DNA of 64,000 nt from Octopus sinensis (lineage: Eukaryota), in the NCBI RefSeq assembly GCF_006345805.1, contig NC_042999.1:125178001-125242000 (forward strand). Direction: 5' to 3'. The stretch's first letter is position 1. The number at the start of each line of letters is the position of its first letter. The notes beneath the pieces were generated by a model. It was not told the DNA's origin. It searched no databases and was given only the letters and a program-made list of their open reading frames with translations. This document shows, one piece after another, positions 54,407 to 56,202 of the stretch. The translations under genes were made by a program, and so were the position numbers.

Positions 54407-56202
54407 TATTTCATTAAAAATTACTATACAGGCATTACAAAGAGGGGACAAACGAGGACAGACAAACATAAAAGGGTGAAGAAGTTATGACGATTAAAAA
54501 GTTCATTTTATCAAATGATGAATCGTTTAAAAATTTTATGATACACACTGCAACATGCAGTGTATTCCTTGAAGGAAAGGCATCCAGCCACCAGGGTAGA
54601 ACCTTACTTTTCTTCCGGGGCTCCACTTACCTGATGCCACTCACTCCCAGTTTTCTTGCCACAAGCTTCGATCTTTTATTGAATCTTTCTCGTGACAGGT
54701 ACCTCTTCTCCAGCCTGATCTTACTACTGAGGTGGTTACTAAAAAAATTAATTTTCCTTTTTTTCTGGGGTCTTTTTTATTGTTTGTGGTGAGGTGCTGC
54801 TCCCCCCCCCTTTTGTGGGGGATGTGGATGGGGAAGGTTCGTGAGTTCGTTTCCGAACTAACGTGAACTCCCCTCGACCACCTCCATGGTGTCGTCAGGG
54901 GAAGTTATGCGTTCTGGTGCCACTTTAGGGAGGGTGGATGTATTTGGTGTTGTCGGGGCCTGTGTGTGCATGGGCTGGGGATTTTGGGTGTCATGTTTGG
55001 GGGCGGACACCATAGATAGGGGAGTGGGAATTTTTGTTTCTGCGGTGGTTAATGTGTGTTCGGGTCCGGGGTATTTTTGAATAGTTGCAGGGCCTGGTGT
55101 CTGCGTCACTTTCTTGTGCCATTGCTCACAGTCTACACGAACGTGACCTTTTTACCACATTCGTAACATTTTGGTTTTTTTCCTTCTGCGTAGATTCTTA
55201 ACACGATATCTTCACCCAAGAGCACTCAGTCTGGAAGCATTTCGATGTCTTCCTGAGCCCCCTGGATGATTGCTGAAATGCTCTATCCGAGTTAGTTTTG
55301 ATGTGCAATGCATGTAATCTATAACATTTTTATTTTGCCATTACTTTCCAAGCTTCGATTTCAGATGGTACCTCTGCCACCTTTATGCGGGCAGTTCGCC
55401 TCCCCATATAGGTTGGCAGAAGCACCACTTACTTCGTTTTCAAGGGGCTCGCCGAGTGCTCTTCGGCCTTTTATTCATTTTCGAATCTTGTTTCAATCGT
55501 GCCATATGTCCGGCCCCTCACTATGTATTTTACATCTTTCCATATGGGGGCCAGACATTTTTCGATTTTGCACTGCTCAGAGTGCTTAAACGTTTTGGGT
55601 GACGGACAGTACGTTTTAAAAACGACTGTCTGCCGTTTTAATTCTTCGATACTGGAGGAGGGTGATATTTTTATATCCCCTCTTTCCTCCTTCATTCGTT
55701 CAAGGAGCTCGGAGAGCTTTTCTTTCGGTAGTGTTACATTTTCACTTACCACCGCGGCAACTGCCAAAAACTTTTTCACTGGCTCCTCCAGTTTACTTTT
55801 TTTCATGAATTATTTCGACCGACATACTCGGCCGAAATTAATTCTTCACACAAAAAATAATTTTTAAAATCCCTAAAAAGGGAAACCTATAATAGGTTTT
55901 TTCACCAACAGTTAAGATCCCACCACCCACTGGAGGGAGGGGTGCAACAATAAAGCTTACAACAGCTTTTACAAGTTCAATTTTTAAACAAGCAACAAGG
56001 AAAGAAACCAACTAACAATTGCCAAAATGGATTCACAAAAATCCAATTTCTGCTTCTCGGCACCGGGAAACAGCATAGTTCAAAGTTCAACAATAATCCA
56101 CTACAATGGCACACGGTTAACAAATCCAATAATGAATAAATTCAACAATCAACAAAACGTCCGACTTACAAACAAGCAAAAAACGCGTCCAACACCGGAA
56201 AC
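54407..56202 (-). mobile_element. ORF1-only (HAL1-like) non-autonomous L1/Tx1-type retroelement with 15-bp TSD
   Basis: TSD GGAAG(T/C)AAGCTTCTT (54392-54406 and 56203-56217); 5' UTR of about 396 nt; gag-like ORF1 from 55806; 3' end ...AATGAAATA/AAG forming AATAAA; no endonuclease or RT sequence in 1796 bp. Confidence 0.8.
54858..55806 (-). pseudogene. Decayed ORF1 (gag-like) with CX2CX4HX4C zinc knuckle
   Basis: MKKSKLEEPVKK...TIETRFENE*KAEEHSASPLKTK*VVLLPTYMGRRTARIKVAEVPSEIEAWKV...LPD*VLLGEDIVLRIYAEGKKPKCYECGK(K)GHVRVDC, then a Pro/Thr-rich tail. The knuckle needs one base restored in an A run; at least 4 stops. Confidence 0.8.

What the first reader, a model, noticed from the sequence alone, without database searches (positions are those of the whole stretch)
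54407..56202. Complete ORF1-only 'half-LINE' retroelement caught inside a SINE
Seen: a 1796-bp unit bounded by a 15-bp TSD (14/15 identical) that splits a family-B SINE exactly. It has a 5' UTR starting GTTTCCGG, a gag-like ORF with a CCHC knuckle, a 3' UTR and an AATAAA end, with no endonuclease or RT. The target on the element strand is T|AAGAAG, close to L1-type preference. Established: truncated LINEs normally lose the 5' end, and ORF1-only HAL1 elements have arisen repeatedly from L1-like LINEs in other animals. Inference: an independently evolved cephalopod HAL1-like family that I do not know to be described.
Basis: partly seen in the sequence, partly recalled or inferred. Interest (0 to 1): 0.8.

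Follow-up and report, generated by a model that had tools for sequence, protein, structure and literature searches.

The report
ORF2-deleted octopus LINE copy in SINE
This is a dead 1.8-kb copy of an octopus L1/Tx1-type jumping gene that keeps its first gene and both ends but has lost almost all of its reverse-transcriptase gene; whether it belongs to a self-propagating "half-LINE" family could not be tested.

Summary
The insertion is real. A 1796-bp unit (window 54407-56202, minus strand) sits between two copies of a 15-mer (14/15 identical). Intact copies of the host SINE carry that 15-mer once.

It holds a 396-nt 5' UTR and a gag-like ORF1 (RRM-like domain, second domain, one CCHC knuckle). 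It has no endonuclease or RT.

Two corrections:
- The ORF is not complete. Only 111 codons are open. The rest needs at least 2 frameshifts, at least 4 in-frame stops and a ~25-nt deletion.
- The "3' UTR" starts with the last 41 codons of ORF2, followed by a 220-nt LINE 3' UTR.

So this is an internally deleted LINE. Homologous ORF1s (30-53% identity) occur only in Octopus. Where downstream DNA is readable and the ORF1 runs to its end, they precede an APE-RT-zf-RVT ORF2 whose best solved match is human L1 ORF2p. In O. vulgaris these are 5.28-kb tandem units.

The 3' tail motif is shared with an abundant octopus tRNA-SINE, which makes trans-mobilisation plausible.

No second copy and no recurrence of the junction could be sought, because no cephalopod genome DNA is searchable here. 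The HAL1-like family claim is plausible but unproven.

The parts
56203..56217 (-). 5' copy of the target-site duplication (AAGAAGCTTGCTTCC)
   Evidence: It is 14/15 identical to 54392-54406. The 15-mer is present once in intact SINE copies.
55807..56202 (-). 5' UTR (396 nt), starts GTTTCCGG
   Evidence: An in-frame stop lies 2 codons before the ATG. Similarity to the 5' UTRs of related LINEs is not significant, so 5' completeness is inferred only from its length (396 nt against about 240-290 nt in relatives).
54858..55806 (-). Degenerate ORF1 (type I ORF1p-like: variable N-terminus, RRM-like domain, second domain, one CCHC, Pro/Thr-rich tail), including the TAG stop at 54860-54858
   Evidence: HMMER search: 40 hits at E<1e-3, and all the named ones are Octopus. 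Alignments A2 and A4.
55474..55806 (-). The only intact stretch of ORF1 (111 codons), ending at a TAA stop at 55473-55471
55432..55635 (-). RRM-like domain 1 (..VVFKTY..IEKCLAPIWKDVKYIVRGRTYGTIETRF..), approximate limits
   Evidence: This is the most conserved block of the family. In the AlphaFold model of homologue P0002 the core has pLDDT >90, and the Foldseek top hits are all RRMs with probability about 1 but E of 4e-3 to 0.1.
55128..55168 (-). CCHC zinc knuckle CYECGKK/GHVRVDC, split by a frameshift near 55150
54753..54857 (-). Linker ending in a basic KRPQKKRK stretch. The deletion junction lies at its 3' edge (~54753-54765)
   Evidence: Relatives have Lys-rich ORF1 tails. Homology to ORF2 starts at 54752.
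54627..54752 (-). Remnant of the last 41 codons of ORF2 plus its stop (INFFSNHLSSKIRLEKRYLSRERFNKRSKLVARKLGVSGIR*)
   Evidence: tblastn with the ORF2 C-termini of two octopus LINEs: 47% identity at E=2e-5 and 46% at E=3e-4. Both hit the same frame and end at the stop.
54407..54626 (-). True 3' UTR, homologous to the 3' UTR of the O. vulgaris LINE; no poly(A)
   Evidence: Local alignment score 28.5 against shuffles of 11.7+-1.9, with 0 of 1000 shuffles reaching it. Alignment A5.
54437..54467 (-). Conserved 3' tail motif GTTTGTCTGTCCTCGTTTGTCCCCTCTTTGT, shared with LINE 3' ends and the octopus tRNA-SINE tail
   Evidence: It matches SINE tails in O. sinensis at 29/31.
54392..54406 (-). 3' copy of the target-site duplication (AAGAAGCTTACTTCC). 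Its first A's may be microhomology with the element's A-rich end
54041..54391 (-). Host SINE, body and tail downstream of the insertion. The 5' head lies at about 56218-56236
   Evidence: blastn against other copies in the window; alignment A1
42425..42636 (+). tRNA-derived SINE whose 3' tail carries the same LINE-type tail motif (42575-42605). It is context for the mobilisation mechanism, not part of the insertion

Best explanation
SHOWN
- The unit is a dead, internally deleted copy of an octopus L1/Tx1-type LINE.
- It consists of a 5' UTR, a type-I ORF1 (RRM-like domain plus one CCHC), then directly the last 41 codons of ORF2, then the LINE 3' UTR with the group's conserved tail.
- About 3.5 kb is missing relative to 5.28-kb full-length relatives. 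The missing part holds APE endonuclease, RT and the zf-RVT domain.
- It was inserted by target-primed reverse transcription into a SINE, leaving a duplication of up to 15 bp.

INFERRED (about even odds)
- The deletion existed in the RNA before insertion.
- The 1.8-kb RNA was then copied in by ORF2 protein supplied in trans by a full-length relative.
- That protein would have been recruited through the conserved 3' tail, the same tail that an abundant octopus tRNA-SINE has borrowed. ORF1 protein made from the element's own RNA may have helped.
- This is how HAL1 (from L1) and RIME (from ingi) work.

NOT SHOWN
- Whether this RNA founded a multi-copy family.
For: - Target-site duplication and empty-site comparison.
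- ORF1 homologues are found only in Octopus. They lie upstream of ORF2 with Exo_endo_phos (1.5e-10), RVT_1 (7.5e-27) and zf-RVT (4.8e-9), in loci L001, L002, L008 and L009.
- The best solved-structure match of that ORF2 is human L1 ORF2p at 9e-37, against R2 at 2.5e-17.
- An ORF2 C-terminal remnant sits at 54752-54630.
- The 3' UTR is homologous to the O. vulgaris LINE 3' UTR.
- The tail motif is shared with SINE tails in the window and in O. sinensis. By inference, this LINE group's machinery does act in trans on RNAs carrying that tail.
- For a pre-insertion deletion (inference only):
  - The breakpoints spare all of ORF1 and the 3' 346 nt and remove over 95% of ORF2.
  - A 396-nt leader is retained. 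Full reverse transcription is more likely for a 1.8-kb RNA than for a 5.3-kb one.
Against: - Only one copy was seen, and nothing shows that the junction recurs.
- No relative above about 53% amino-acid identity exists in the protein collections.
- The four related ORF1s that run to their end with readable downstream DNA are all followed by ORF2; two others are 3'-truncated fragments, and none has this junction.
- The copy is heavily mutated, so it says nothing about selection on ORF1.
- A later genomic deletion inside a once full-length insertion would leave exactly the same structure.
- L1/Tx1 placement rests on domain content and on the only two LINE types with solved structures. No RT phylogeny was made.
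Confidence: 0.5

Rival explanations
1. One-off genomic deletion. A full-length ~5.3-kb LINE inserted here with this duplication, and about 3.5 kb (the ORF1 end to near the ORF2 end) was later lost from the chromosome. On this reading there is no ORF1-only RNA and no family.
For: - The copy is old and damaged: stops, frameshifts and a ~25-nt internal deletion.
- No other copy or recurrent junction was found.
- The four related ORF1s that run to their end with readable downstream DNA keep ORF2.
Against: - The breakpoints fall just after ORF1's basic tail and 41 codons before the ORF2 stop. That is a narrow outcome for a random deletion.
- Full-length insertion of L1-type elements is rare compared with 5'-truncated ones (established knowledge of L1).
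- Neither point is decisive.
Confidence: 0.33
2. One-off chimera made during reverse transcription. The enzyme copied the last ~346 nt of a LINE RNA, then switched template to the 3' end of a second, prematurely terminated ORF1-only LINE transcript (as in U6-L1 chimeras).
For: The junction is A-rich and preceded by AATAAA (..CAATAAAAAAGACCCCAGAAAAAAAGGAAAA|TTAAT..). It could be a decayed poly(A) tract of a prematurely polyadenylated RNA.
Against: - The same A-rich stretch reads KRPQKKRK in the ORF1 frame, and relatives end ORF1 with Lys-rich tails. Coding sequence therefore explains it.
- The linker and the ORF2 remnant are in one frame.
Confidence: 0.1
3. Not LINE RNA at all, but either a processed pseudogene of a host gene that has captured an ORF1-like domain, or a gag fragment of an LTR retrotransposon.
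For: - Some O. sinensis gene models embed the ORF1-like domain in larger proteins (P0024, P0032).
- CCHC knuckles also occur in LTR-element Gag.
Against: - An ORF2 C-terminal remnant, a LINE 3' UTR and the tail motif follow the ORF.
- The duplication of up to 15 bp does not fit integrase (4-6 bp).
- Homologues sit in front of APE-RT ORF2.
Confidence: 0.02

Closest known systems
HAL1 ('half-L1') of mammals (Smit 1999; Bao & Jurka 2010, as cited in PMC5753468)
   Same: - It is an L1-clade derivative that encodes only ORF1 and keeps LINE ends.
- It is presumed to be mobilised by ORF2p in trans.
- The present unit has that architecture.
   Different: - HAL1 is defined as repeated families with many copies. 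Here there is one dead copy.
- HAL1 ORF1p is type II (coiled coil, RRM, CTD; Transposase_22). This one is type I (RRM-like plus CCHC).
- This unit retains 41 codons of ORF2.
- It ends in a specific conserved tail rather than a poly(A) tract.
Octopus L1/Tx1-type LINEs (e.g. the 5.28-kb tandem units at O. vulgaris OX597840.1, locus L008; 'L1-Tx1' families listed for O. vulgaris in PMC13282606)
   Same: - Homologous ORF1 (30-36% identity).
- Homologous ORF2 C-terminus.
- Homologous 3' UTR and tail motif.
   Different: - They carry a 1132-aa ORF2, which this unit lacks.
- The nearest relative seen is only about 53% identical in ORF1, so the actual parent subfamily was not found.
RIME/ingi and NARTc/L1Tc of trypanosomes (internal-deletion derivatives of LINEs; from my own knowledge)
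   Same: - Non-autonomous elements made by internal deletion.
- Both ends of the parent LINE are retained.
   Different: Those derivatives keep no functional ORF. This one keeps the whole ORF1.
HeT-A of Drosophila telomeres (Gag-only non-LTR retrotransposon; from my own knowledge)
   Same: A non-LTR element that encodes only a CCHC-containing Gag/ORF1 protein and depends on RT supplied in trans.
   Different: - HeT-A belongs to the Jockey clade.
- It is telomere-specific.
- It is an established multi-copy family with a host function.

Membership tests
Non-LTR retrotransposon insertion (TPRT) | Flanking target-site duplication of variable length, with an empty site known | tested here: met
   The 15-mers are 14/15 identical. 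Intact SINE copies carry the 15-mer once.
Non-LTR retrotransposon insertion (TPRT) | The 3' end corresponds to a LINE 3' end | tested here: met
   The 3' UTR and tail are homologous to the O. vulgaris LINE 3' end. An ORF2 C-terminal remnant lies upstream.
Autonomous LINE | Encodes endonuclease and reverse transcriptase | tested here: not met
   tblastn with the ORF2 of relatives finds only the last 41 codons. The unit is 1796 bp.
L1 superfamily (L1/Tx1) | ORF2 with an N-terminal APE endonuclease, RT and a C-terminal Cys-His motif | tested here: met
   Tested on relatives, not on the unit itself. They have Exo_endo_phos, RVT_1 and zf-RVT, and the best PDB match is human L1 ORF2p at 9e-37.
L1 superfamily (L1/Tx1) | The RT groups with L1/Tx1 in a phylogeny of LINE clades | not tested
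   No reference set of LINE RTs was available. PDB holds only L1 and R2 types.
Type I ORF1p (Khazina & Weichenrieder classes, as summarised in PMC5203782) | At least one RRM followed by a CCHC zinc knuckle | tested here: inconclusive
   - The CCHC is present in homologues (zf-CCHC 3.6e-6 and 9.7e-5). In this copy it appears only after frame joining (6e-4, just below cutoff).
- The RRM is supported only by a fold model. The top Foldseek hits are all RRMs with probability about 1, but E is 4e-3 or worse. There is no Pfam RRM hit.
HAL1-like (ORF1-only, non-autonomous LINE family) | ORF1 retained, ORF2 absent, LINE termini retained | tested here: met
HAL1-like (ORF1-only, non-autonomous LINE family) | Many copies sharing the same ORF1-to-3' junction at different sites with different duplications | not testable with these tools
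   - No second copy in the window or in the fetched octopus loci.
- No cephalopod genome collection is available. Metagenome contigs holds no octopus DNA.
HAL1-like (ORF1-only, non-autonomous LINE family) | ORF1 open, or under purifying selection, in source copies | tested here: not met
   In this copy there are at least 4 in-frame stops, at least 2 frameshifts and a ~25-nt deletion. The family-level test is not possible with one copy.

The most novel reading that the evidence does not exclude
The unit is one member of a propagating ORF1-only (HAL1-like) family that arose independently in octopods from an L1/Tx1-type LINE. It would be mobilised in trans through the same conserved 3' tail that the abundant octopus tRNA-SINE uses. 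That would make it the first such family described in a mollusc, and one built on a type I (RRM plus CCHC) ORF1.
Probability: 0.35. Interest if true: 0.45.

Novelty: new member of a known kind. Interest (0 to 1): 0.22.

Why it matters
As it stands, this is an ordinary fossil: one internally deleted LINE copy in a repeat-rich octopus region.

If the junction recurs genome-wide, it would add a molluscan, type-I-ORF1 example to the short list of ORF1-only LINE parasites (HAL1, HeT-A). It would also support the idea that keeping ORF1 helps a non-autonomous RNA compete for ORF2 protein.

A more solid by-product is the link between this L1/Tx1-type LINE group and the 3' tail of a very abundant octopus tRNA-SINE. 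That link nominates the LINE partner that drove SINE expansion in octopus genomes.

Tried and rejected
- Word-indexed protein search with a frame-joined translation gave 0 hits. My first joining of the middle frames was wrong; homologues later showed that frame 0 continues to about 55336.
- Two profile searches returned only 2 and 6 proteins. The first was swamped by low-complexity tails.
- An exact look-up of the 111-aa ORF found it is not on record.
- A single-sequence AlphaFold run of the 111 aa was uninformative (pLDDT 38).
- Logan contigs carrying homologues (L002-L007, L011) are 1-2.4 kb. They end inside ORF1 or at the start of EN, so they cannot show the junction.
- Two O. bimaculoides loci (L012, L013) hold only 3'-truncated ORF1 fragments or assembly gaps. 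They are not ORF1-only elements.
- L010 (P0024) was returned without DNA.
- Two exact-pattern scans of metagenome contigs each gave 0 hits: one for an element-specific 21-mer and one for the abundant SINE/LINE tail 27-mer. That collection holds no octopus DNA, so the negative result is uninformative.
- 5' UTR similarity to related LINEs was not significant (22-26 of 1000 shuffles reached the score).
- A weak second tblastn match of ORF2 residues 51-65 at 54763-54719 (E=9.4) overlaps the confirmed remnant in another frame. I dismissed it as chance.
- I considered a splice-derived deletion and rejected it. The pyrimidine tract plus AG at the junction would have been removed from a spliced RNA, not retained in it.

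Full report
**1. The observation**

The region reads on the minus strand. The 1796-bp unit (56202 down to 54407) lies between AAGAAGCTTGCTTCC (56203-56217) and AAGAAGCTTACTTCC (54392-54406), which are 14/15 identical.

When the two flanks are joined they align to uninterrupted copies of the same tRNA-type SINE elsewhere in the window (28866-29232 +, 63756-63376 -). Those copies carry the 15-mer once, at that position. The duplication is therefore a genuine target-site duplication, and the SINE was the target.

The local SINE lacks 3 nt next to the duplication compared with the other copies. The first A's of the 3' duplication copy could equally belong to the element's A-rich end, so the duplication is 'up to 15 bp'.

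**2. Anatomy**

- After a 396-nt leader, an ATG at 55806 opens a frame that stays open for only 111 codons.
- An exhaustive HMMER search with those 111 residues found 40 proteins at E<1e-3. The best were 41-48% identical.
- Every named hit is from Octopus sinensis, O. vulgaris or O. bimaculoides. The rest come from Logan assemblies.
- Full-length members (about 280-340 aa or more) share one plan: a variable N-terminus, a conserved block (IEKCLxPIW..Y..RG..GT.EVRF), a second block (LLPTYxGRRT...IP), one CCHC knuckle and a basic or Pro-rich tail.
- An AlphaFold model of P0002, built with the family alignment, gives a confident core (residues ~84-178, pLDDT >90). Its Foldseek hits are all RRMs (La, nucleolin and others) with probability near 1 but weak E-values. 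The RRM is therefore supported but not proven.

Using the homologues as guides, the window copy reads as follows:

- frame 0 to about 55336
- frame 2 for 55288-55148
- frame 1 for 55151-54861
- 4 in-frame stops inside aligned segments, at least 2 frameshifts and a ~25-nt deletion
- the knuckle itself is split by a frameshift

So the gag-like ORF with a CCHC exists, but it is a wreck and not a complete ORF.

**3. What the ORF belongs to**

- In O. bimaculoides (L001) the homologous ORF1 is followed by an ORF2 with Exo_endo_phos, RVT_1 and zf-RVT domains. A second copy follows head-to-tail.
- In O. vulgaris (L008) at least three units of 5278-5286 nt stand in tandem and are 98-100% identical. 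Each has ORF1, and one unit has an open 1132-aa ORF2.
- In O. sinensis (L009) and in a Logan contig (L002), ORF1 is followed by the endonuclease.
- Among solved structures, the ORF2 is closest to human L1 ORF2p (9e-37), well ahead of R2 (2.5e-17).
- A recent O. vulgaris repeat annotation lists L1-Tx1 among its recently active LINE clades (PMC13282606). Type I ORF1p (RRM plus CCHC) is described as typical of Tx1-like L1s in non-mammals (PMC5203782).

**4. The key correction**

The stretch called 3' UTR begins with coding remnants. The C-terminal ~40 residues of ORF2 from both L001 and L008 match window 54752-54630 in one frame and end at a stop (47% at E=2e-5; 46% at E=3e-4).

Downstream, the last ~105 nt align significantly with the L008 LINE 3' UTR (score 28.5 against 11.7+-1.9, with 0 of 1000 shuffles reaching it).

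The full order of the unit is:

- 5' UTR
- ORF1
- a short linker ending KRPQKKRK
- the last 41 codons of ORF2
- 220 nt of LINE 3' UTR

About 3.5 kb of a ~5.3-kb LINE is missing, and the junction lies at about 54753-54765. Nothing else of ORF2 is present in the unit or anywhere in the window.

**5. The 3' end**

There is no poly(A) tract. The AATAAA is completed by the duplication's own A's.

The motif GTTTGTCTGTCCTCGTTTGTCCCCTCTTTGT sits 30 nt from the end. It recurs near the 3' ends of the L008 and L001 LINEs. It also recurs in the 3' tail of a tRNA-derived SINE at window 42425-42636 and in two SINE copies in O. sinensis, at 27/31 and 29/31 identity.

This LINE group and that SINE subfamily therefore share a tail. 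By the usual LINE-SINE logic, the group's ORF2 protein can act in trans on RNAs carrying it. That makes a non-autonomous, ORF2-less derivative mechanistically credible.

**6. What could not be settled**

The family claim needs other copies with the same junction. I found none, but the searches were weak:

- There is no other copy in the 64-kb window.
- There is none in about 98 kb of fetched octopus DNA, all of which belongs to other subfamilies.
- No protein closer than about 53% identity exists in the collections.
- No collection here holds cephalopod genome DNA.
- The four related ORF1s that run to their end with readable downstream DNA keep ORF2. Two other loci hold truncated fragments.

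Three readings fit the single copy:

- a deletion that pre-dated insertion, with trans-mobilisation (HAL1- or RIME-like)
- a later genomic deletion in a once full-length copy
- a template-switch chimera

I lean to the first for two reasons. The breakpoints neatly spare ORF1 and the tail, and a leader as long as 396 nt is more easily retained when a 1.8-kb RNA is copied. Both arguments are inferences.

**7. Verdict**

The insertion and its ORF1-only architecture are real, and the L1-type ancestry is supported. The 'complete ORF' and the 'HAL1-like family' are not shown. As a single dead deletion derivative it is a new member of a known kind and of modest interest. The LINE-SINE tail link and the tandem LINE arrays are the more reusable by-products.

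Noticed in passing
window 42425-42636 (+); also L009 12010-12250 and 13130-13290: A subfamily of the octopus tRNA-derived SINE ends in a tail (..TAATCCGTTTGTCTGTCCTTGTTTGTCCCCTCTATGTTTAGCCCCTTGTGGGTA.TAAAGAAATAGG). This tail matches the 3' ends of the L1/Tx1-type LINE group (L008 7660-7712, and the element at 54437-54467). It nominates that LINE group as the SINE's partner. Other SINE copies in the window carry a different tail (..AAATTTCAGGCCTTGTGCCTATAGTAGAAAGGATTATTATT).
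   Followed up: partly
L008 2660-17026 (O. vulgaris OX597840.1); L001 9766-17500 (O. bimaculoides CM046605.1): Full-length LINEs of this group stand in direct head-to-tail tandem. L008 has at least 3 units with a period of 5278-5286 nt at 98-100% identity. L001 has 2 units. No recognisable target sequence lies between units. This is unusual for dispersed LINEs and suggests either insertion next to an existing copy or array amplification.
   Followed up: partly
L008 2623-4134 versus 7908-9026: In one tandem unit ORF1 reads on for 503 codons and overlaps the ORF2 start. In the next unit it stops about 130 codons earlier, inside the Lys-rich A-run region. The true ORF1 end in this LINE group may therefore lie at or over the ORF2 start.
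   Followed up: no
proteins P0024 and P0032 (O. sinensis LOC118765946, LOC115225349): Annotated gene models embed the ORF1-like domain in much larger proteins (623 and 654 aa) alongside unrelated sequence. These may be exaptations or annotation chimeras. The DNA for L010 was not returned.
   Followed up: no
window 51346-51965 (-): Three copies of the tRNA-derived SINE lie head-to-tail, each ending in ATTATTATTA directly before the next copy's head.
   Followed up: no
window 2033-2971 and 29699-30570: Long TA/TG-rich microsatellite-like stretches produce the longest 'ORFs' in the window (YIYIYI..., CVCVCV...). These are not genes. No ORF of 130 aa or more in the window looks like a gene, and no reverse-transcriptase or endonuclease remnant of this LINE group lies outside the element.
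   Followed up: partly
L003-L007 (Logan SRR11869384/85/90/91/94): Near-identical ~1.7-kb contigs carrying a frameshifted ORF1 homologue recur in five sequencing runs. All break at a C homopolymer after the Lys-rich tail. They look like an expressed or abundant ORF1-bearing sequence, but their 3' continuation is not assembled.
   Followed up: partly
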